Below, piece by piece: positions 15,264 through 24,530 of a stretch of 64,000 nt of DNA. Below the pieces are notes generated by a model, which was not told the origin of the DNA, searched no databases, and was given only the letters and a program-made list of their open reading frames with translations. Position 1 is the first letter of the stretch, and each line of letters opens with the position of its first letter. The stretch covers positions 186,001 through 250,000 of the IMG/VR virus record IMGVR_UViG_3300033997_000478; one strand, given 5' to 3'. The translations under genes and the position numbers were made by a program.

Positions 15264-15518
15264 ATGGATGAACAGCTGATCGACCACAGCAACAAGCGCG
15301 TGACGCCGGGCGTGTACAAGCACTACAAACGTGGCCGCTTCGTCGTGCTGGGCGTTGCCAAGAACTGCAAGACCAACGAAGAGGTCGTGGTCTTCTACAA
15401 CGAGGAAGACATGTCCTCGATGTGGATTCGCCCGGTCGAGGAGTTCCTGAGCACGGCCGAGCTGGACGGTGATCAGGTGGTCCGCTTCGTCAAGGTCGAC
15501 CACGTCCTGCGCGACTGA
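15264..15518 (+). CDS. DUF1653-family protein
   Basis: GVYKHYKRG..V.GVAK...T.E.VV.Y....MWIRP..EF; AAGGAG RBS. Confidence 0.8.
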   Translation: MDEQLIDHSNKRVTPGVYKHYKRGRFVVLGVAKNCKTNEEVVVFYNEEDMSSMWIRPVEEFLSTAELDGDQVVRFVKVDHVLRD

Positions 15519-15582
15519 GTGTGATCGTATGTGGGGAGGATGGTCCTCCCCACTGCGCTGTAAGAACCCTAGGGGAATTAGG

Positions 15583-15981
15583 ATGAAAGTGCGACGCAGG
15601 GGATTGTTCCAGAGCTTGGTGTTTGTCATCGCATGGCGGTTGAACGCCTTGCGCCAGAAGTACTTCTCACCGGACGTACCGCCGGTGGTCCAGATCCCGC
15701 GGGAGATCCTTCCGCTGACGTATCTGGGTTCGGTGATCATGCAGTACTGCGCCTTCACCAACCGTGAGCCGGAGGAGCTGAAAGCTTCTGCCAAGCTGAC
15801 CCAGTTGGTCGAACGCGGCACCGGTGACCACGAGCTGCACAGCACGCTGCTGGAGATGTTTATCCACGGCTCTTACGTCACCTCGACGTTTGACTGGCTG
15901 GTCAGTATCGGCGATGCCAAACACGAAGAGCGGGAGGCGTTCTTTAAGTTCGCCACGATCTCACCTGTAATCCCGACCTAA
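15583..15981 (+). CDS. hypothetical protein
   Basis: ORF followed by a hairpin. Confidence 0.55.
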   Translation: MKVRRRGLFQSLVFVIAWRLNALRQKYFSPDVPPVVQIPREILPLTYLGSVIMQYCAFTNREPEELKASAKLTQLVERGTGDHELHSTLLEMFIHGSYVTSTFDWLVSIGDAKHEEREAFFKFATISPVIPT

Positions 15982-15985
15982 CCAT

Positions 15986-16008
15986 CCCCGCCTTCGGGCG
16001 GGGTTTTA
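15986..16008 (+). terminator. intrinsic terminator-like hairpin
   Basis: CCCCGCC-TTCG-GGCGGGG-TTTTA. Confidence 0.75.
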
Positions 16009-16024
16009 TTCGCATGGAGAAGTT

Positions 16025-16585
16025 ATGGCGCGTGAAGAAAATGCGTTGATGTTTCGTCTGCAAGTGCGACTGAAATCGGACACTCCGGACTTTGTAATTC
16101 AGACGCTACGTCTGATGGTGGGGCAGCGTGCAGTGCAGCCGCCCAAGCACCCGCCCGAACATGCTTTTGGCCGTTTGCCGGGATGGTACAACCTGCTGCG
16201 TAATCTGAGCACGCGTACGCAGCGCTTTGCCTCCCACGAAACGGGCGGCAGTGGGAAGTTCAGCCAGTTGAAGTACACGTCGGGTTCATCCACCTTGCGT
16301 GAGTACAGTGGTTACTACGAACTCAAGGCAATTGGTGTCAGTAGTGCTGAAGAGCAGGATTTCGGTCTGTTCCTGGCATGGCTCTCGCCCTACTTGGTGC
16401 GTGCTGAGGGCGATCAGTGGTTGGCGCTGGTGCAAGCCTATGCCTTCTACACCCCGAAGGCAGGTCGTCGTAGGACCAAAGCAGGACTGATCAAGTTGTA
16501 TAGTCATCCGGTGAAAGGTGGTAGCTATCCGACCCTACATTACCGCGTTGGTCGTTTGCCGGATCTGGTCAAGCACATCTTGTGA
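16025..16585 (+). CDS. phage protein of unknown function (paralog of 8824..9453)
   Basis: LKSDTPDFVIQTLRLM motif; GGAG RBS. Confidence 0.7.
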   Translation: MAREENALMFRLQVRLKSDTPDFVIQTLRLMVGQRAVQPPKHPPEHAFGRLPGWYNLLRNLSTRTQRFASHETGGSGKFSQLKYTSGSSTLREYSGYYELKAIGVSSAEEQDFGLFLAWLSPYLVRAEGDQWLALVQAYAFYTPKAGRRRTKAGLIKLYSHPVKGGSYPTLHYRVGRLPDLVKHIL

Positions 16586-16607
16586 GACCCTCGTTCAAGG
16601 ACACCCC

Positions 16608-16919
16608 ATGTACGGCACCGCCGACAACAAGAAGAGCTTCCATCTGCGGATGGGGCCAGTAACGCTGCACTCCCTCCCGCCCAAGGACGTTGCAGTTCGC
16701 GTCCACATCTGTCCGGAGACCAACGTGCTGTTGGTGTTGGGCCGCGATAAGGGTGAGTGGACGGAGAAGCACTTGATGGCTGCGCAGTTCATCGCCGACC
16801 TGGCTGAGTACATGAAGCAGCGCGCCTTCACCGGGCACTTCTATCTCGGCGGCGCTGAGTACCTGCGCGTCAACCAACGCTACACCCGTTCGACCCCGCG
16901 CGCCCGCGCACCTCTGTGA
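16608..16919 (+). CDS. hypothetical protein
   Basis: ATG at 16608 after AAGGA. Confidence 0.6.
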   Translation: MYGTADNKKSFHLRMGPVTLHSLPPKDVAVRVHICPETNVLLVLGRDKGEWTEKHLMAAQFIADLAEYMKQRAFTGHFYLGGAEYLRVNQRYTRSTPRARAPL

Positions 16920-16959: not shown

Positions 16960-17028
16960 GACGTCTTTCTTTTTTGCCTTAATACTGTGGAGAGCACCAT
17001 TCCTTCCCACACTCAGGGTTTTAACCCC

Positions 17029-17817
17029 ATGGCAAAGAACGCACAGAAGTCTGATCGTCGCAGCGGTAAGCGTGCTCGTCGTCAAGAAGAGACCGGCTCC
17101 AACGTGATCCCGTTCACTGTCAGCGCCAAATCCGACAAGCGCCACCGCGAAGAGTCCACTCGTCGACTCATCGCCAAGCCGCTAGTGTGCAAGGGCGACA
17201 CCCAGCCGAAATACCTGGACGCAATCCGTGGTCATGACCTGACTTTCGGTGTGGGTCCGGCCGGTACGGGTAAGACCTACGTGTCCACCAAGTGGGCCGC
17301 CATCGAAGTTGACCAGAAGCGCTACCAGCGCCTGATCATCGTTCGCCCCATCGTCGAAGCAGGTGGTGGCCTGGGCTTCTTGCCCGGTGACATCGCAGAA
17401 AAGACCGACCCCTACCAGGAACCGTTCAAGCGCGTGCTGATCGAGCACTGGGGTGAGAGTCATCTGGAAAACCTGATGCGCGGTGAGGACGCCAAGGTGG
17501 TGTTCGTGGCGCCGGAGTTCATTCGTGGCCGCACCTTCGACAATGCCGTGGTGATTCTGGACGAAGCCCAGAACATGACGCCGCTGCAGATGAAGACCTT
17601 CCTCACCCGTATCGGTGAGAACTCCAAGGTCATCATCAACGGCGACATCGACCAGGTGGACATCAAGGGGCTGTCGGGCCTGAAGGACGCCATCGACCGG
17701 CTGGAAGGAATGGACGAAGTGGGCATCATCCACTTCACCGAAGAAGACATCGTGCGCAGCAAGCTGGTCAAGGCCATCCTGATGCGCTACCGCACCCAAG
17801 ACACCCTCAAGGTGTAA
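17029..17817 (+). CDS. phoH: PhoH-family ATPase
   Basis: GPAGTGKT, LGFLPG, IRGRTF, ILDEAQN, GDIDQVD. Confidence 0.95.
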   Translation: MAKNAQKSDRRSGKRARRQEETGSNVIPFTVSAKSDKRHREESTRRLIAKPLVCKGDTQPKYLDAIRGHDLTFGVGPAGTGKTYVSTKWAAIEVDQKRYQRLIIVRPIVEAGGGLGFLPGDIAEKTDPYQEPFKRVLIEHWGESHLENLMRGEDAKVVFVAPEFIRGRTFDNAVVILDEAQNMTPLQMKTFLTRIGENSKVIINGDIDQVDIKGLSGLKDAIDRLEGMDEVGIIHFTEEDIVRSKLVKAILMRYRTQDTLKV

Positions 17818-17858: not shown

Positions 17859-17936
17859 TGCTAAGTTTTCAGACGACCTCTAATGGTATGCACAGGTCAA
17901 AGGACCATGTGCACTCCTGACAATAAAGAGGTTCAA

Positions 17937-18920
17937 ATGAACACCTATAACGAAAGCGCTCACGTAGAAGAACCGACGGATGCCGTCGAACCAACCATCG
18001 CCAAGATCGAAATGGCGTGGGGTTGGAACAACACCACCTGTCGCCAGTTGGTTTTCTTTGAGGGTATCTACGATTACTTCCGGCGGCGTGCTTTTGGAAG
18101 CGACATCACCGATCCAGTTGAAGCTGACTATTTGGAAGTCAACCGCACGGATCTGCAGGGTTTCCAATTCCTGCGGTTCAATCGCGCAACTCGAGAACTC
18201 CATGGTACGGTCCGTCTGAAGGGTCGCCAACGCCATTCTACCAAGATGGTGGATGTCGATCTGGTCTTCAAGATGACCCCCATTCTCTTGGAAATTGAGT
18301 ATCGCGGTAAAAGCCAACCCGGTACGGTGCTCTGGCAGAAATTCATCGAGGTCGAACGTGGGATTGCTCCACGTTGGATCAGGGTGATTGACACCACCCC
18401 TCGCCGCATGGTTCCCCCCAACATGCTCTCCTTGGACAGTAAGGAACTGGTGTCTACCATCAGCCGCGAACTGTCCGTCAATGTCATGTTGGACTCAGAG
18501 TCCTGCGAAAATCTCAACTTCATCCTCGGCAGCCTTCAGGCTTGGCGGGGGATGCGGGTAATCGATGAGGAGCTGGCTCTCAGGCATATGGGGGTACTGT
18601 CTATCGCTCTGTACGACGCACAGAGTGAACTTAACGCGGAGATCCCCGTTGGTGACGGGACCAAGACCCGCGGGCACCTTACTCGGAAGGCTGTTTTGCG
18701 TATCATGAAGGCGTTGGATCCTTTCACCGAACCGGGGACATCGCCAATGGGGCAGGTGTTTGCCCAAGTGGCGGGTAGGAAGATGTTGTCCATTCAGTTG
18801 GACCCCGACGACCCCAACCCGATCGATACGGTTAGCTTCCTGATTGACGAGCACCGCAAGCGTGAACGTTACCCTGGCACGATCATGAAAGTGGCAGATC
18901 GGAAGAGGGATTGGTCCTAA
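17937..18920 (+). CDS. hypothetical protein
   Basis: ATG at 17937 after AGAGG; long ORF. Confidence 0.7.
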   Translation: MNTYNESAHVEEPTDAVEPTIAKIEMAWGWNNTTCRQLVFFEGIYDYFRRRAFGSDITDPVEADYLEVNRTDLQGFQFLRFNRATRELHGTVRLKGRQRHSTKMVDVDLVFKMTPILLEIEYRGKSQPGTVLWQKFIEVERGIAPRWIRVIDTTPRRMVPPNMLSLDSKELVSTISRELSVNVMLDSESCENLNFILGSLQAWRGMRVIDEELALRHMGVLSIALYDAQSELNAEIPVGDGTKTRGHLTRKAVLRIMKALDPFTEPGTSPMGQVFAQVAGRKMLSIQLDPDDPNPIDTVSFLIDEHRKRERYPGTIMKVADRKRDWS

Positions 18921-18959: not shown

Positions 18960-19177
18960 TGTCGGCGCATCATATGTGGGGAAAGAATTCTGTCCCGAAA
19001 CACACGTCGAGAAGACCCCCTAAGGACTGCTCGACAAGCAAGGTTTGTGCCCTAAGGTGGGTCTGTAAAAAACAACCCCCGACCTTGTAGGATATGAAAA
19101 AGTCCTCTAAGCCGCAACACGCAATCACCCCCATCAGAGGATACCCGTCCCTCTGATCGTCCAACTCAGGAAACAAC

Positions 19178-21943
19178 ATGGAAACTCTGGAAGACCGGAC
19201 CGCCTACAATGCAGCCATCGCCACCTCGCACGCTCAGCTCAAGGAGCTGATCGCCGCCCATGCGCATGTGCTGGTCATCTTCAGCCGCGTGACGTGCCCG
19301 CACTGCCGCACGCTGGAAGCTGTAATGGCTGAACCGGTGATCCAAGACGCCTTCGCTGCGCGCGATGTGAGCGTTGTCGAGATCAAGCTGGACAAGGTCG
19401 AGCCGGCCGTGGCCGTCGAATACGGTTTGCGTGCAGCGCCGACCCAGGTGTACTTCGTGGAAGGCAAGGAAGTGGCCCGTGCAACCGGCGCTACCGCCCT
19501 GACCGATCTGGTCGGCCTGATCGAAGCCAACTTCTCCAAGCCGGCTGCTGAAGAGAAGCCGCTTGTGGACATCAAGCCTGATGCGGTCCTTGAAAAGCAC
19601 CTGGTCAGCGAAGCACAGCCGCAGAAGGCTCCTGAAATGCGCGTGACCAAGCGCAACGGCAAGACCGAGCCGGTGGACCTGAACAAGATCCTGCGCGCCG
19701 TACAGCGCAGCGCAGAAGGCCTGAACGCCGTTGATCCGATGCGCGTGGCCACCCGTACCATCTCCGGCCTGTACGACGGCGCCACCACCCGTGAACTGGA
19801 CGAGCTGTCCATCCGCACCGCCGCCCTGCTGACCGGCGAAGACCCTGAGTATTCCAAGCTGGCTGCGCGCCTGCAGGCGAACTACATCGCCAAGGAAGTC
19901 ACCAACCAGCAGATCTACGCGTTCACCCAGTCCATCCAGCTGGGCTTCGATGTCGGCCTGATCAATGAGCGTCTGCTGAAGTTCGTGCAGGCCAATGCCC
20001 GCAAGCTCAACGACACCATCAACATCGAAAACGACAACAACTTCGAGTACTTCGGTCTGCGGACCATGTACGACCGCTACCTTCTGCGCCACCCGATCAC
20101 CCGCAAGGTCATCGAGACCCCGCAGCAGTTCTTCCTGCGTATCGCTTCGGCCCTGGCCACCGACGTCTCCGAAGCCCAGGCCCTGTACGAGCGCATGGCT
20201 GCGCTGGACTACCTGCCGTCCTCGCCGACCCTGTTCAACTCCGGCACCCGCCATGAGCAGATGTCCTCCTGCTTCCTGCTGGACTCCCCGCAGGACGACC
20301 TGGGCGCGATCTACGCCAAGTACGGCGACATCGCTCAGCTGAGCAAGTTCTCCGGCGGTATCGGCGTGGGCTTCACCCGCGTACGTGCTCGTGGTTCGCT
20401 GATCAAGTCCACCAACGGCCACTCCAACGGCATCGTGCCGTGGCTGAAGACCCTGGACTCCTCCGTGGCCGCCGTCAACCAGGGCGGCAAGCGCAAGGGC
20501 GCTGCTTGCGTCTATCTGGAAACCTGGCATGCCGACGTCGAGGACTTCCTCGAACTGCGTGACAACGTGGGCGATGAAGCCCGCCGTACCCACAACCTGA
20601 ACCTGGCCAACTGGATCCCCGACCTGTTCATGCAGCGCGTGGAAGCTGACCAGCAGTGGTCGCTGTTCGACCCGAACAAGGTCCCGCACTTCACCGACCT
20701 GTACGGTGACGACTTCACCGCCGCCTACGAGCAGGCCGAGCAGCAGGGCCTGTACGAACGCCAGATCTCCGCACGCAAGCTGTACGCGCGCATGATGCGC
20801 ACGCTGGCTGAGACCGGCAATGGCTGGATGAACTTCAAGGACAAGTGCAACAAGGCGTCCAACCAGACCGCCAAGGCCGGCAACGTCATCCACCTGTCCA
20901 ACCTGTGCACCGAGATCCTGGAAGTCACCGACAAGGACGAGACGGCCGTGTGCAACCTCGGCTCGATCAACCTGGGTCACCACGTGGTCAATGGCGAGTT
21001 CGACTTCGCCAAGCTGGGTGAGACCGTGCGTCTGGCCATCCGTCAGCTGGACCGGGTGATCGACCTGAACTTCTACCCGATCGAATCGGCCCGTCGTTCC
21101 AACAGCCGCTGGCGTCCGGTCGGTCTGGGTACGATGGGTCTGCAGGACGTGTTCTTCAAGAAGGGCTACGCCTTCGACTCCGAAGAAGCCCGCGCCCTGT
21201 CCAAGCAGATCGCCGAGACCATCTACTTCTACGCGCTGGAAGCTTCGTGCGAACTGGCTCAGCAGCTGGGCAAGCACGCCTCCTTCGCCGACACCCGTGC
21301 CGCCAAGGGCGAGCTGCAGTTCGACGCGTGGGGCGTGACCCCGAGCGATACCGCCAAGTGGGACGCTCTGCGTGAGCAGATCAAGCAGCACGGTCTGCGC
21401 AATTCGCTGATGATCGCCATCGCCCCCACTGCCACGATCGCCTCGATCGCCGGCTGCTACGAGTGCGTGGAACCGCAGGTGTCCAACCTGTTCAAGCGCG
21501 AGACCCTGTCTGGCGACTTCCTGCAGATCAACAAGTACCTGGTGGCTGACCTGAAGAAGGCCGGCCTGTGGAATGCTGGCGTGCGCGACGCCATCAAGCT
21601 GGCTGAAGGTTCGATCCAGGGCATCGAGGCCATTCCGGCCGCTCTGCGTCAGACCTATCGCACCGTGTGGGAACTGCCGATGCGTTCGCTGATCGACATG
21701 GCCGCCGATCGTGGTGCGTTCATCGACCAGTCCGCCTCGCTGAACCTGTTCATGGAAAGCCCGAACATCGGCGCGATGTCTTCCATGTACATGTACGCTT
21801 GGAAGAAGGGTATCAAGACCACCTACTACCTGCGTTCGCGCCCGGCGACCAAGATCGCCAAGACCACCGTGTCGGCCTACAGCCCGACCGATGCCGTGGC
21901 CTGCTCGCTGGAAAACCCGGAAACTTGCGAAGCCTGCACCTGA
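19178..21943 (+). CDS. nrdA: class Ia ribonucleotide reductase alpha subunit with N-terminal thioredoxin-like domain and ATP cone
   Basis: Thioredoxin CPHC; ATP cone VTKRNG; PTLFNSG, SSCF, GGIG, SNLCTEI, CNLGS, IAPTATI, KTTYYLR, C-terminal CEAC. Confidence 0.97.
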   Translation: METLEDRTAYNAAIATSHAQLKELIAAHAHVLVIFSRVTCPHCRTLEAVMAEPVIQDAFAARDVSVVEIKLDKVEPAVAVEYGLRAAPTQVYFVEGKEVARATGATALTDLVGLIEANFSKPAAEEKPLVDIKPDAVLEKHLVSEAQPQKAPEMRVTKRNGKTEPVDLNKILRAVQRSAEGLNAVDPMRVATRTISGLYDGATTRELDELSIRTAALLTGEDPEYSKLAARLQANYIAKEVTNQQIYAFTQSIQLGFDVGLINERLLKFVQANARKLNDTINIENDNNFEYFGLRTMYDRYLLRHPITRKVIETPQQFFLRIASALATDVSEAQALYERMAALDYLPSSPTLFNSGTRHEQMSSCFLLDSPQDDLGAIYAKYGDIAQLSKFSGGIGVGFTRVRARGSLIKSTNGHSNGIVPWLKTLDSSVAAVNQGGKRKGAACVYLETWHADVEDFLELRDNVGDEARRTHNLNLANWIPDLFMQRVEADQQWSLFDPNKVPHFTDLYGDDFTAAYEQAEQQGLYERQISARKLYARMMRTLAETGNGWMNFKDKCNKASNQTAKAGNVIHLSNLCTEILEVTDKDETAVCNLGSINLGHHVVNGEFDFAKLGETVRLAIRQLDRVIDLNFYPIESARRSNSRWRPVGLGTMGLQDVFFKKGYAFDSEEARALSKQIAETIYFYALEASCELAQQLGKHASFADTRAAKGELQFDAWGVTPSDTAKWDALREQIKQHGLRNSLMIAIAPTATIASIAGCYECVEPQVSNLFKRETLSGDFLQINKYLVADLKKAGLWNAGVRDAIKLAEGSIQGIEAIPAALRQTYRTVWELPMRSLIDMAADRGAFIDQSASLNLFMESPNIGAMSSMYMYAWKKGIKTTYYLRSRPATKIAKTTVSAYSPTDAVACSLENPETCEACT

Positions 21944-21946
21944 TCC

Positions 21947-22474
21947 ATGGAACTGTATCAGCACCCGGTCTTTCCGGGTGTTCAGGCCACGCGATCCGGT
22001 GAGGTCTTCTCGCACGGCAAGCATCTGAGGGGAAGCAACATCAAGTACCCTCAGGTGTTTGTCCGCGATGCGGGTAAGCTCCAAACCAAGCATCGTCTTG
22101 TCTACGAGTGCGTCACCGGTGAGCCATTACCGGAATACGAACGCAAGGGCAACGGGCTTGAACTCAACCACAAAGACGGCGACACCCGCAATGCCGCCTT
22201 CGACAACCTTGAGCTGATCACCCATGGCGAGAATATGCGCCATTCATGGCAGACGCTTGGCAAACGCCAAGCTCTTGCTCCCGGTGTGCTCAACGCCAGT
22301 GCCAAACTGACGGTCCATGACATCCATGTGATCTTCATCGACTGGTACTACGGCGCCACCTATGCGGAACTCGGGCGACGGTTCGGTGTGCATGAAAGTG
22401 CCATCAGTCGAATCATCTCCGGAGAGCAATACCAACGCGAATCCCAGCAGATCCGGGAAGAGCTCGGACTGTAG
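21947..22474 (+). mobile_element. free-standing HNH homing endonuclease with C-terminal HTH
   Basis: HRLVY..ELNHKDGDTRNAAFDNLELITHGENMRH, then AKLT..DI..ELGRRFGVHESAISRI. Confidence 0.85.
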
Positions 22475-22535
22475 TAACTGAGATGGGGGTGCCCGCAACG
22501 GCACCCCCTCTTTATCCCCTGACAAGAAGAAGATC

Positions 22536-24530
22536 ATGACGAAGAAAATGTTGCTCGACCCCGGTTTCGAACTGACGCTGCGCCCGATGCGCTACCCGCA
22601 GTTCTACGACATGTACCGCGACGCGATCAAGAACACCTGGACGGTTGATGAAATCAACTTCCAGCTGGACATCAGCGACCTGCATGACAAGATGACGCCG
22701 GCCGATCGACACCTGATCCACCGCCTGGTTGCGTTCTTCGCCACCGGCGACAGCATCGTCTCCAACAACCTGGTGCTCAACCTGTACCAGCACCTGAACT
22801 CACCTGAAGCGCGCATGTACCTGTCGCGCCAGCTGTACGAAGAAGCCCTGCACGTGCAGTTCTACCTGACCCTGCTGGACAACTACCTGCCGGATCCGGA
22901 ACAGCGCAATGCCGCCTTTGCTGCGGTCGAGAACATCCCCTCGATCAAGAAGAAGGCCGACTTCTGCTTCAAGTGGATCGACTCGATCCAGGACCTGCAC
23001 AAGCTGGAAACCCGCGAACACCGCCGGCAGTTCCTGCTCAACCAGATCTGCTTTGCCGCGATCATCGAAGGCCTGTTCTTCTTCGCTGCCTTCGCCTACG
23101 TGTACTACTTCCGTTCGCGCGGTCTGCTCTCCGGCCTGGCCAGCGGCACCAACTGGGTGTTCCGCGACGAAAGCTGTATGCCTGTGGACTCCACGGAGAT
23201 TTTGACCGATAAGGGCTTTGTGGGCCTGCGTGAGGTCATTGCGCGGGGCGAGGCGGGCGATAGCTTCAACGTTGCCCAGTACGCCGCTGACGGCACTGTG
23301 AGCTTTGTGGAACCGCGCGGTTATGTACTCAAGCCTTTCAACGGTGAGCTGATCCACTGCCGCACTGAGAAGAGTGTGTCGCTACTGACCACCGATGACC
23401 ATGACAACGTGACGCGCTCCAAAACCACCGGTGCACTGCGCAAGACTAAAGCGATGGACATGTCGCTTTCTTCGACGTCGGAAATGGTCTGCGCCGGCTT
23501 CGGCATGGGTCCTGCGGCTACGTTGACTGACATCGAACGCTTTGCTATCGTTTACCAGGCCGATGGCGTTGAGCGCGTCAATGGTAATGGTGAGCGCAGC
23601 GGTACTGTTGGCGTTAAGTTTGGCTTTGCCAAGGAACGCAAGATCCAGCGCTTTGAAGCGCTGTTGGATCGCCTGCGGTGGGATTACTCCAAGGTCATCA
23701 GCTCTCGTGAAAACGAGCGTAACGACCAGGTTGTGTACCGCGTTAAGATGCCTGCCTCGCTGATGGCAATCATCGACAAGGACTTCTCCTGGGTGACTAT
23801 GGATCGGATCCATAGCAACTGGGCGCGTGAGTTCATCGAAGAGGTCTCCCATTGGGACAGTTATCTGGCTGAAGACCGCACCTGCGTGCAGTACATCAAT
23901 ACCAACGAGGACGCGGTTAACAAGGTACAGGCGGTGGCCGCTCTGGCCGGGTATGCCACCAACCTCTACCGCAAGACCGACGGCCGTAGCGACAGCTACA
24001 ACGACGTGTACAACCTGTTTATCAAGCATCGCGATTACGCTGACCTGCATAATGCGGAATTGGTCACCGTACCGTTCACCGGGGATGTCGGTTGTGTGAA
24101 CGTACCCACCGGAATGATCATCGTTCGTCAGGACGGTAAGGTTCACGTTACCGGGAACTGCCACATGAACTTCGCCTTCGAGTCGGTGCGCGTGATCCGT
24201 GAAGAAGAGCCGGACCTGTTCGACGCCGAGATGGAAGCGCAGGTGTACCAGATGCTGGAAGAAGGCATCGAGTGCGAGCTGCAGTTCGCTGAAGACGTCC
24301 TCTCCGGCGGCGTGGCTGGCATCTCCACCAACGACATGCGCCAGTACCTGCAGCACTGCGCCGACAACCACTTCCTGCGCCTGGGCATGAAGAAGAAGTA
24401 CAACGTCTCCAACCCGCTGCCGTTCATGGAGCTGCAGGACGTCCAGGAACTGACCAACTTCTTCGAGCGCCGCGTCTCGGCCTACCAGGTCGGCGTGCAA
24501 GGCGAAGTTGCCTTCGACATGAACTTCTAA
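22536..24530 (+). CDS. nrdB: class Ia ribonucleotide reductase beta subunit, intein-containing
   Basis: FFATGD, YEEALHVQFY, IEGLFF, RDES/CH, NFFE; 328-aa in-frame insertion. Confidence 0.97.
   Translation: MTKKMLLDPGFELTLRPMRYPQFYDMYRDAIKNTWTVDEINFQLDISDLHDKMTPADRHLIHRLVAFFATGDSIVSNNLVLNLYQHLNSPEARMYLSRQLYEEALHVQFYLTLLDNYLPDPEQRNAAFAAVENIPSIKKKADFCFKWIDSIQDLHKLETREHRRQFLLNQICFAAIIEGLFFFAAFAYVYYFRSRGLLSGLASGTNWVFRDESCMPVDSTEILTDKGFVGLREVIARGEAGDSFNVAQYAADGTVSFVEPRGYVLKPFNGELIHCRTEKSVSLLTTDDHDNVTRSKTTGALRKTKAMDMSLSSTSEMVCAGFGMGPAATLTDIERFAIVYQADGVERVNGNGERSGTVGVKFGFAKERKIQRFEALLDRLRWDYSKVISSRENERNDQVVYRVKMPASLMAIIDKDFSWVTMDRIHSNWAREFIEEVSHWDSYLAEDRTCVQYINTNEDAVNKVQAVAALAGYATNLYRKTDGRSDSYNDVYNLFIKHRDYADLHNAELVTVPFTGDVGCVNVPTGMIIVRQDGKVHVTGNCHMNFAFESVRVIREEEPDLFDAEMEAQVYQMLEEGIECELQFAEDVLSGGVAGISTNDMRQYLQHCADNHFLRLGMKKKYNVSNPLPFMELQDVQELTNFFERRVSAYQVGVQGEVAFDMNF
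23175..24158 (+). mobile_element. intein in NrdB, probably with a degenerate LAGLIDADG-type endonuclease
   Basis: Starts CMPVDSTEILTDKG, ends VGCVNVPTG..VRQDGKVHVTGN followed by +1 Cys; removal restores RDES-CHMNF. Confidence 0.93.

What the first reader, a model, noticed from the sequence alone, without database searches (positions are those of the whole stretch)
19178..19640. Thioredoxin domain fused in front of the ATP cone of NrdA
Seen: one uninterrupted ORF with a thioredoxin-like domain (FSRVTCPHCRTL..GLRAAPTQVYFVEGKEVAR..G), a P/E/K-rich linker, then the usual NrdA start MRVTKRNG and a C-terminal C..CEAC shuttle. Established: NrdA needs an external Trx or Grx, and some RNRs carry fused glutaredoxins. 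Inference: a self-reducing RNR that needs only host thioredoxin reductase.
Basis: partly seen in the sequence, partly recalled or inferred. Interest (0 to 1): 0.65.

Follow-up and report, generated by a model that had tools for sequence, protein, structure and literature searches.

The report
Phage thioredoxin fused to host-derived NrdA
A 324-kb jumbo phage encodes its ribonucleotide reductase large subunit as one protein with a thioredoxin domain tethered in front, which probably gives the enzyme its own built-in electron donor; this is a thioredoxin version of the known glutaredoxin-RNR fusions, not a new principle.

Summary
Window 19178-21943 (+) is one open frame of 921 aa: a thioredoxin domain (Pfam PF00085, 39 bits against a cut-off of 23.5; CPHC at aa 40-43), a disordered linker of about 33 aa, then a complete class Ia NrdA (ATP cone, catalytic cysteines, C-terminal C909/C917/C920).

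It is not an assembly artefact. Fifteen sequence variants come from JGI, ENA and Logan assemblies, and contigs from independent studies cross the junction without gaps. The linker carries an in-frame one-codon indel. dN/dS is 0.29 for the Trx part and 0.36 for the linker.

The gene is a chimera:
- The NrdA body and NrdB are 82-90% identical to chromosomal Stenotrophomonas genes.
- The Trx part matches, end to end, the stand-alone thioredoxin of related Xanthomonas jumbo phages (LucasX, RTH11).

This is the phage's only redoxin. The phage encodes no glutaredoxin and no thioredoxin reductase.

Most likely it is a tethered reductant for the NrdA C-terminal cysteines, recharged by a host system. 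That role, and the electron source (TrxR or glutathione), are inferred. Glutaredoxin fusions to RNR subunits are published. I found no other Trx::NrdA fusion, but my survey was limited. Verdict: new variant of a known kind, moderate interest.

The parts
19178..21943 (+). Whole trx::nrdA fusion ORF (921 aa plus stop)
   Evidence: Fifteen variants in independent assemblies. Ungapped contigs from other studies.
19178..19537 (+). Thioredoxin domain, aa 1-120 (Pfam match aa 16-116 = 19223-19525)
   Evidence: PF00085 39 bits against a cut-off of 23.5. Aligns to E. coli Trx1 residues 15-107. AF2 model with Foldseek hits all thioredoxins. dN/dS 0.29. 36-37% identical end to end to the stand-alone Trx of phages LucasX and RTH11.
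19295..19306 (+). Active-site CPHC (C40, C43)
   Evidence: Present in every cluster member that covers it, 14 of 15; P0014 starts downstream of the motif. Aligns with C32/C35 of E. coli Trx.
19439..19441 (+). Pro88, equivalent of the conserved cis-proline (Pro76 of E. coli Trx)
   Evidence: Alignment. Invariant in A2 and A4.
19538..19636 (+). Linker, aa 121-153, predicted disordered
   Evidence: pLDDT below 50 for nearly all of it. Most variable stretch, with an in-frame one-codon indel between subclades. No significant DNA similarity to the host nrdA leader.
19637..19882 (+). ATP cone (aa 154-235); homology to bacterial NrdA starts here
   Evidence: PF03477. tblastn to Stenotrophomonas starts at aa 148-154. 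Bacterial nrdA contigs in run X13 match from 19637 onward, with unlike sequence before. GC3 steps up here.
20039..21832 (+). NrdA all-alpha domain and catalytic barrel, with C365, N575, C577, E579, C592 and Y883-Y884
   Evidence: PF00317 and PF02867, E 1e-198. Motif positions. 82% identity to Stenotrophomonas NrdA.
21902..21937 (+). C-terminal redox shuttle: C909, C917-x-x-C920
   Evidence: The same tail is present in the bacterial homologue on L008.
21947..22474 (+). Free-standing HNH endonuclease between nrdA and nrdB
   Evidence: PF13392 HNH_3, 36.7 bits. Absent in relative L004, where nrdB follows nrdA directly.
22536..24530 (+). nrdB (partner subunit) interrupted by a 326-aa intein-like insert (aa 215-540, nt 23178-24155)
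   Evidence: PF00268 split into two stretches. Exteins are 86-90% identical to Stenotrophomonas NrdB and 96% to the uninterrupted L004 NrdB.
16987..17817 (+). phoH, a synteny anchor shared with LucasX and RTH11
   Evidence: PF02562. 52-63% identity to LucasX and RTH11 PhoH.

Best explanation
The phage makes a single polypeptide in which a thioredoxin-fold domain (CPHC active site) is tethered by a flexible linker of about 33 residues to the N-terminus of a complete class Ia RNR alpha subunit. After each turnover the active-site disulfide (C365/C592 equivalents) passes to the C-terminal cysteines (C917/C920, perhaps C909). The tethered domain, in cis or across the alpha2 dimer, reduces that tail disulfide. 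A host system, thioredoxin reductase or glutathione, then re-reduces the domain. The gene arose in the phage lineage by joining the lineage's own stand-alone thioredoxin gene to an nrdAB cassette captured from a Stenotrophomonas-like host. Shown: the architecture, its conservation, purifying selection and the chimeric origin. Inferred: electron flow from the domain to the tail, and the identity of the upstream reductant.
For: One ORF with Trx, ATP-cone and NrdA domains. Thioredoxin fold confirmed by model and fold search and by alignment to E. coli Trx1 with both cysteines and the cis-Pro in register. Fifteen variants in independent assemblies keep the frame, and the 14 that cover the motif keep CPHC, with an in-frame indel in the linker. 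dN/dS is 0.29 for Trx, 0.36 for the linker and 0.24 for the ATP cone. Ungapped contigs in other studies, and short contigs from RNA-type libraries crossing the linker. It is the only PF00085 match in the 324-kb genome; there is no PF00462 and no PF07992 match. Catalytic residues and the C-terminal cysteines are intact, and nrdB lies adjacent. Precedent: a fused Grx reduces RNR in Facklamia ignava, and Grx:NrdA fusions occur in phages phiW-14 and S-TIM5 (PMC6187632). Chimeric origin: NrdA is 82% and NrdB 86-90% identical to Stenotrophomonas but only 25% to LucasX NrdA. The Trx part is homologous to LucasX and RTH11 stand-alone Trx with shared SPFH-PhoH-NrdA synteny. GC3 steps from 0.77 (Trx) and 0.61 (linker) to 0.85-0.87 in the NrdA body.
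Against: There is no biochemical evidence. The active site is CPHC, which in thioredoxin scaffolds raises the potential by about 42-66 mV (PMC2665069, PMC4395160), so the domain is probably a weaker reductant than classical Trx. It lacks the WCGPC tryptophan and the buried Asp26 (Ile34). The complex prediction gave no answer. An internal start that yields plain NrdA cannot be excluded. The CXXC dipeptide differs among the phage homologues (CPAC, CAGC), so the family's chemistry is not fixed.
Confidence: 0.6

Rival explanations
1. Two products: the ORF yields both the full fusion and, from an internal start (ATG at 19637, or GTG at 19565), a plain NrdA. The fusion would be a minor or regulatory isoform while bulk RNR uses host redoxins.
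For: An in-frame ATG sits exactly where bacterial homology begins. Its Shine-Dalgarno pairing energy (-3.4 kcal/mol) is close to that of the annotated start (-4.3) and within the range of the phage's gene starts. The last eight linker codons are nearly invariant.
Against: 29% of internal ATGs in this window have an equal or better SD score, so the signal is not specific. In the bacterial donors this Met appears to be internal, preceded by a leader that looks coding by eye, and called proteins there are 794-809 aa. No + strand promoter-like or terminator-like site lies between the parts. Purifying selection on Trx and a frame-preserving indel show that the upstream part is translated in frame.
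Confidence: 0.2
2. The Trx domain serves another purpose than recharging NrdA: a redox sensor or regulator of RNR activity or oligomerisation next to the ATP cone, or a general disulfide reductase or oxidase for other phage or host targets that is merely co-expressed.
For: The CPHC motif is the DsbA motif and shifts thioredoxin scaffolds toward oxidising potentials. The domain sits next to the regulatory ATP cone, not next to the C-terminal tail. The complex prediction gave no support (not evidence either way).
Against: The domain has a plain thioredoxin fold of about 110 aa, without the helical insert of DsbA, and its N-terminus shows no hydrophobic signal-like stretch. The experimentally tested F. 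ignava Grx::ATP-cone::NrdB fusion has the same redoxin-then-ATP-cone order (on NrdB), and its Grx is an efficient RNR reductant. RNR is the classical thioredoxin client, and the phage has no other redoxin.
Confidence: 0.12
3. A neutral or decaying fusion: an accidental read-through product with a non-functional N-terminal appendage.
For: The fusion is confined to one narrow clade, a single 90%-identity protein cluster.
Against: dN/dS is 0.29 over the Trx part, similar to the ATP cone. CPHC and the cis-Pro are invariant where covered. No stops or frameshifts occur in the 14 full-length variants, and the linker indel is in frame. The ancestral stand-alone Trx slot is empty, so this is the only copy.
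Confidence: 0.05

Closest known systems
Facklamia ignava Grx::ATP-cone::NrdB, and the Grx fusions to NrdA, NrdB, NrdD and NrdJ listed by Rozman Grinberg et al. 2018 (PMC6187632), including Grx:NrdA in Delftia phage phiW-14 and cyanophage S-TIM5, and ATP-cone:Grx:NrdA in CroV and CeV
   Same: A redoxin domain fused N-terminally to an RNR subunit, upstream of an ATP cone, and frequent in viruses. In F. ignava the fused domain was shown to be an efficient RNR reductant.
   Different: Here the domain is a thioredoxin (PF00085; Glutaredoxin PF00462 scores only 13.5 bits, below its cut-off). It carries CPHC rather than a Grx CPYC-type site, sits on the catalytic subunit, and was joined to a host-captured nrdA. 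That paper searched only for PF00462, so Trx fusions were not surveyed.
Stand-alone thioredoxins of Xanthomonas jumbo phages vB_XciM_LucasX (LUCX_236) and RTH11 (WJJ55068)
   Same: 36-37% identical over the whole domain, with the same IFSR..C..C, GLR.AP and EVAR..G signatures. The genome neighbourhood is shared (SPFH ... PhoH ... NrdA).
   Different: They are separate genes of about 115 aa, lying about 2.4 kb upstream of a different NrdA (25% identity). Their active sites are CPAC and CAGC. They end where the linker of the fusion begins.
Chromosomal class Ia NrdA/NrdB of Stenotrophomonas and other Lysobacterales
   Same: 82% (NrdA) and 86-90% (NrdB exteins) identity. Same ATP cone, same catalytic residues and same C-terminal cysteine tail.
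   Different: The bacterial proteins have a short leader of about 26-40 aa instead of a thioredoxin domain. None of the 119 nearest non-self clusters carries PF00085.
E. coli thioredoxin 1 and its CPHC active-site variant
   Same: Same fold, with the CXXC and cis-Pro loop in register. The CPHC variant is a characterised, more oxidising thioredoxin.
   Different: About 30% identity. It lacks Trp28/Trp31 and Asp26, and it is covalently tethered to its presumed client.

Membership tests
Thioredoxin family (Pfam PF00085) | Profile score above the curated threshold | tested here: met
   39 bits for aa 1-153 alone, 35 bits within the whole protein; cut-off 23.5. The genome scan gives 39.5 bits.
Thioredoxin family (Pfam PF00085) | Thioredoxin fold (beta-alpha-beta-alpha-beta-alpha-beta-beta-alpha) | tested here: met
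   The AF2 model has strands 12-15, 30-36, 65-70, 89-94 and 97-103 with interleaved helices. The top 50 Foldseek PDB hits are thioredoxins or designs based on one.
Thioredoxin family (Pfam PF00085) | CXXC at the start of the active-site helix, and a cis-Pro loop | tested here: met
   C40/C43 align with C32/C35 and P88 with P76 of E. coli Trx1. They are invariant in the clade where covered.
Thioredoxin family (Pfam PF00085) | Canonical WCGPC signature and buried Asp26 | tested here: not met
   The sequence reads TCPHC, and Ile34 stands at the Asp26 position. The phage homologues also have Ile or Val there.
Thioredoxin family (Pfam PF00085) | Reduced by NADPH-thioredoxin reductase | not testable with these tools
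   Only the R85-A-A-P88 loop resembling the R73-G-I-P76 loop of E. coli Trx can be noted. That loop's role in thioredoxin reductase contact is from my own knowledge, not tested here.
Class Ia ribonucleotide reductase alpha subunit (NrdA) | ATP cone, all-alpha domain and ten-stranded barrel domain | tested here: met
   PF03477, PF00317 and PF02867 (E 1.4e-198).
Class Ia ribonucleotide reductase alpha subunit (NrdA) | Catalytic Cys/Asn/Glu, redox pair, Tyr-Tyr radical path and C-terminal cysteine pair | tested here: met
   Motifs SSCFLL (C365), SNLCTEI (N575, C577, E579), AVCNLGS (C592), TTYYLRS (Y883/Y884), and C909/C917/C920. The assignment to E. coli residues is from my knowledge of NrdA.
Class Ia ribonucleotide reductase alpha subunit (NrdA) | Adjacent NrdB partner | tested here: met
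   nrdB at 22536-24530, PF00268. It is interrupted by an intein-like insert, so activity requires splicing.
Redoxin::RNR fusions (Rozman Grinberg et al. 2018) | Redoxin domain and RNR subunit in one ORF | tested here: met
Redoxin::RNR fusions (Rozman Grinberg et al. 2018) | The redoxin is a glutaredoxin (PF00462 above threshold) | tested here: not met
   PF00462 scores 13.5 bits against a cut-off of 22.9. No PF00462 match in the genome.
Redoxin::RNR fusions (Rozman Grinberg et al. 2018) | The fused domain supports RNR turnover | not testable with these tools
   Needs an enzyme assay.
DsbA-type oxidase (considered because of CPHC) | Helical insertion domain in the Trx fold, and export signal | tested here: not met
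   The domain is about 110 aa with plain Trx topology. The N-terminus is polar, with no hydrophobic signal-like stretch. No signal-peptide predictor was run.

The most novel reading that the evidence does not exclude
This is the first natural thioredoxin-family (PF00085) fusion to an RNR catalytic subunit. A jumbo phage built it by welding its own lineage-specific thioredoxin onto an nrdAB cassette stolen from its Stenotrophomonas-like host. The enzyme would then turn over with only a host flavoprotein reductase (or glutathione) and be independent of the host's thioredoxin and glutaredoxin pool. It would be a case of a phage 'domesticating' a host enzyme by adding its own electron-delivery module.
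Probability: 0.35. Interest if true: 0.65.

Novelty: new variant of a known kind. Interest (0 to 1): 0.5.

Why it matters
RNR must be recharged after every turnover, and which redoxin does this is usually hard to establish. A natural covalent Trx-NrdA pair would give a defined system for studying how a redoxin reaches the flexible C-terminal tail of class Ia RNR. It extends the published glutaredoxin-fusion theme to the thioredoxin family. The CPHC site offers a natural test of how much reducing power is needed once the redoxin is tethered. The chimeric origin, a phage Trx joined to host-captured nrdAB with an intein and a homing endonuclease arriving in some variants, also documents stepwise remodelling of nucleotide metabolism in jumbo phages. 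It points to Stenotrophomonas or a close relative as the host.

Tried and rejected
1. Complex prediction of Trx (aa 1-125) against NrdA (aa 154-921) gave no answer (score 0.00, mark 0.34). It is not evidence either way.

2. I suspected that the linker is the translated host nrdA leader, with its SD and GTG start (alignment A3). Local DNA alignment against five bacterial leaders was no better than shuffles (p 0.11-0.99). The idea is dropped and the linker's origin stays open.

3. Shine-Dalgarno pairing energies do not discriminate the annotated start from internal candidates.

4. Word-index searches with aa 1-160 and aa 1-125 found only the protein's own cluster. One 120-aa hit (P0016) is the same gene cut by a contig end, not a stand-alone gene.

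5. The exhaustive HMMER search with aa 1-240 listed only ATP-cone matches in its top 150. Ten hits with N-terminal extensions carried no Trx domain. Caveat: the library holds 50%-identity representatives, and even this protein's own cluster was not listed, so fusions can hide behind plain NrdA representatives.

6. The ESM Atlas feature search scored at most 0.77 and was uninformative.

7. IMG/VR scans found only one more contig of the same phage clade with the fusion, plus two distant stand-alone CGPC thioredoxins with no nrdA nearby.

8. A megablast of the region against GenBank phages found nothing.

9. The sigma-70 promoter and terminator scan found nothing on the + strand between the parts. 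The hairpin upstream of the start is not significant.

10. No alternative genetic code was used.
Full report
**Where the window lies**

The window is bases 186001-250000 of a 324,428-bp virus record with direct terminal repeats, estimated complete. Neighbouring genes and relatives mark it as a phiKZ-like jumbo phage. A close relative's contig carries a PhiKZ_MCP-family gene. SPFH and PhoH proteins are 52-68% identical to those of the Xanthomonas jumbo phages vB_XciM_LucasX and RTH11, in the same order.

**Observation**

The ORF listing and translate give one uninterrupted frame, 19178-21943 (+), of 921 aa. Pfam finds four domains:

| Domain | Residues | Score |
|---|---|---|
| Thioredoxin PF00085 | 16-116 | 39 bits when aa 1-153 are scanned alone; cut-off 23.5 |
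| ATP-cone | 154-235 | 44.7 bits |
| Ribonuc_red_lgN | 288-359 | 74.5 bits |
| Ribonuc_red_lgC | 363-885 | E 1.4e-198 |

PHROGs agrees: phrog_84 for the RNR part and phrog_22 'thioredoxin domain' for the N-terminus.

**The N-terminal part is a thioredoxin**

- phmmer against PDB sequences aligns aa 23-119 with residues 15-107 of E. coli thioredoxin 1. C40/C43 fall on C32/C35 and P88 on the cis-Pro76.
- An AlphaFold2 model of aa 1-160 gives pLDDT 82-92 for aa 11-110 with the thioredoxin strand-helix order. Nearly all of aa 121-160 has pLDDT below 50, so it is a flexible linker.
- Foldseek against the PDB returns thioredoxins throughout the top 50.
- The domain is atypical. Its active site is T-C-P-H-C instead of W-C-G-P-C, and Ile34 replaces the buried Asp26.
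- CPHC is the DsbA dipeptide. In thioredoxin scaffolds it raises the potential by about 42-66 mV (PMC2665069, PMC4395160). The domain is therefore probably nearer to glutaredoxin potentials than to classical thioredoxin. This is inference.

**The NrdA part looks fully functional**

The catalytic cysteine motif, the redox pair, the Tyr-Tyr pair and the C-terminal C909/C917-x-x-C920 tail are all present. nrdB follows at 22536.

**The fusion is not an artefact**

- The protein's 90%-identity cluster has 15 distinct sequences from JGI, ENA and Logan, on contigs up to 327 kb.
- Aligned, they form two subgroups about 89% identical over the first 200 residues. The 14 members that cover the motif keep CPHC, and the frame stays open. 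The linker differs by a one-codon in-frame indel.
- Nei-Gojobori dN/dS between the window and relative L004 is 0.29 for the Trx part, 0.36 for the linker, 0.24 for the ATP cone and 0.12 for the rest. The upstream part is translated and constrained.
- The junction stretch is held by runs from 13 studies, covering subsurface, freshwater, root, termite gut, indoor and wastewater samples.
- A 213,964-bp freshwater contig covers 18800-20300 with 19 substitutions and no gaps. A 9,694-bp termite-gut contig covers 18800-19947 with 9 substitutions and no gaps.
- Short contigs from RNA-type wastewater libraries cross the Trx-linker and linker-ATP-cone boundaries. This is consistent with transcription, but DNA carry-over cannot be excluded.

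**Origin: a chimera**

- The NrdA body (from aa 148-154 on) is 82% identical to chromosomal NrdA of Stenotrophomonas species, and 74-81% to other Lysobacterales. The NrdB exteins are 86-90% identical to the S. forensis gene.
- The NrdA of the related phage LucasX is only 25% identical. This lineage therefore replaced or acquired its nrdAB from a Stenotrophomonas-like host.
- GC3 agrees. It is 0.85-0.87 in the NrdA body and 0.86-0.90 in the NrdB exteins (host nrdA 0.90). It is 0.77 in the Trx part and PhoH, and 0.61 in the linker.
- In run X13, bacterial nrdA contigs match the window from exactly 19637 onward, with unlike leader sequence before it.
- The Trx part is 36-37% identical, over its whole length, to the stand-alone thioredoxins of LucasX (CPAC) and RTH11 (CAGC). 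Those proteins end just where the linker starts.
- In those phages the trx gene lies between homologues of window ORFs 15451-15978 and 16515-16916, upstream of phoH. That slot holds no trx here, and the fused copy is the only PF00085 match in the genome.
- A Stenotrophomonas thioredoxin-like protein is nearly as similar (34%, 54 bits against 64-66 bits for LucasX). The phage-lineage origin of the domain thus rests on the slightly better full-length match, the shared signatures and the synteny. It is not proven.

**How widespread is it?**

- Word-index searches found no fusion outside the cluster.
- Of the 120 nearest NrdA clusters, only its own carries PF00085.
- Eighty IMG/VR NrdA loci and eighty bacterial loci contain no match to this Trx next to nrdA, apart from the same clade.
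- An alignment-based IMG/VR scan added only two stand-alone CGPC thioredoxins.
- The exhaustive HMMER search with aa 1-240 showed no second protein with both a Trx and an ATP-cone match in its top 150. Its 50%-identity representatives can hide fusions, so this is weak negative evidence.
- Published work lists glutaredoxin fusions to NrdA, NrdB, NrdD and NrdJ, many of them viral, and proves function for F. ignava Grx::ATP-cone::NrdB. That survey used only the Grx profile.
- The RNR-family phylogeny paper I checked (PMC9531940) does not mention redoxin fusions.
- I found no report of a Trx::NrdA fusion, but I cannot exclude one in RNRdb or InterPro.

**Mechanism**

The most likely reading is a tethered, dedicated reductant for the C-terminal cysteine shuttle, recharged by a host reductase. 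Three points support it:
- The phage has no glutaredoxin, no second thioredoxin and no thioredoxin-reductase-type flavoprotein.
- The linker and the C-terminal tail are both flexible, so they can plausibly reach each other (for the linker; the rest is inference).
- The same domain order, redoxin then ATP cone, works in F. ignava, there on NrdB.

Whether TrxR or glutathione is the electron source is open. So is whether a plain NrdA is also made from an internal start. SD energies are non-discriminating, and no promoter-like or terminator-like site separates the parts. The complex prediction gave no answer.

**Verdict**

This is a new variant (thioredoxin-type, on the catalytic subunit, of chimeric origin) of the known redoxin-RNR fusion theme, and of moderate interest.

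Noticed in passing
window 22536-24530 (insert about 23178-24155): nrdB carries a 326-aa intein-like insert. It starts with Cys and ends ...GN followed by Cys, and gives a weak LAGLIDADG_3 match. The close relative L004 has an uninterrupted 336-aa NrdB, so the intein is polymorphic within the clade.
   Followed up: partly
window 21947-22474: A free-standing HNH_3 endonuclease with a C-terminal HTH sits between nrdA and nrdB. It is absent in L004, where nrdB starts 75 nt after nrdA. It is probably a homing endonuclease.
   Followed up: partly
window 19637-24530; L088: The whole nrdAB cassette is 82-90% identical to Stenotrophomonas chromosomal genes and has host-like GC3 (0.85-0.90). This indicates recent capture from the host and points to Stenotrophomonas or a close relative as the host.
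   Followed up: yes
L008 (IMGVR_UViG_3300011847_000004): This 'viral' IMG/VR contig carries a plain bacterial-type nrdA (81% identity) amid very GC-rich, bacterial-looking genes. It may be a misclassified Stenotrophomonas-like chromosome fragment.
   Followed up: partly
L088-L167, upstream of the ATP cone: Lysobacterales NrdAs carry an N-terminal leader of 26-40 aa ending in a conserved F-x-L-T-x-P-P-x-A-x-x motif just before the ATP cone. Differences between species lie mostly at third codon positions when read by eye, so the leader looks coding. Its function is unknown.
   Followed up: partly
window 15978-16515: The position where LucasX and RTH11 carry their stand-alone thioredoxin gene, between homologues of window ORFs 15451-15978 and 16515-16916, holds no thioredoxin here. 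This fits relocation of the gene to the front of nrdA.
   Followed up: partly
window 19133-19157: An 8-bp-stem hairpin lies 20 nt upstream of the fusion's start codon, and its stem is identical in relative L004. The folding energy of the region is not better than shuffles (z -0.36), so its significance is unclear.
   Followed up: partly
window 17883-18920: A 345-aa ORF between phoH and the fusion has no Pfam match. A counterpart of 322-323 aa occupies the same position in relatives L004 and L087.
   Followed up: no
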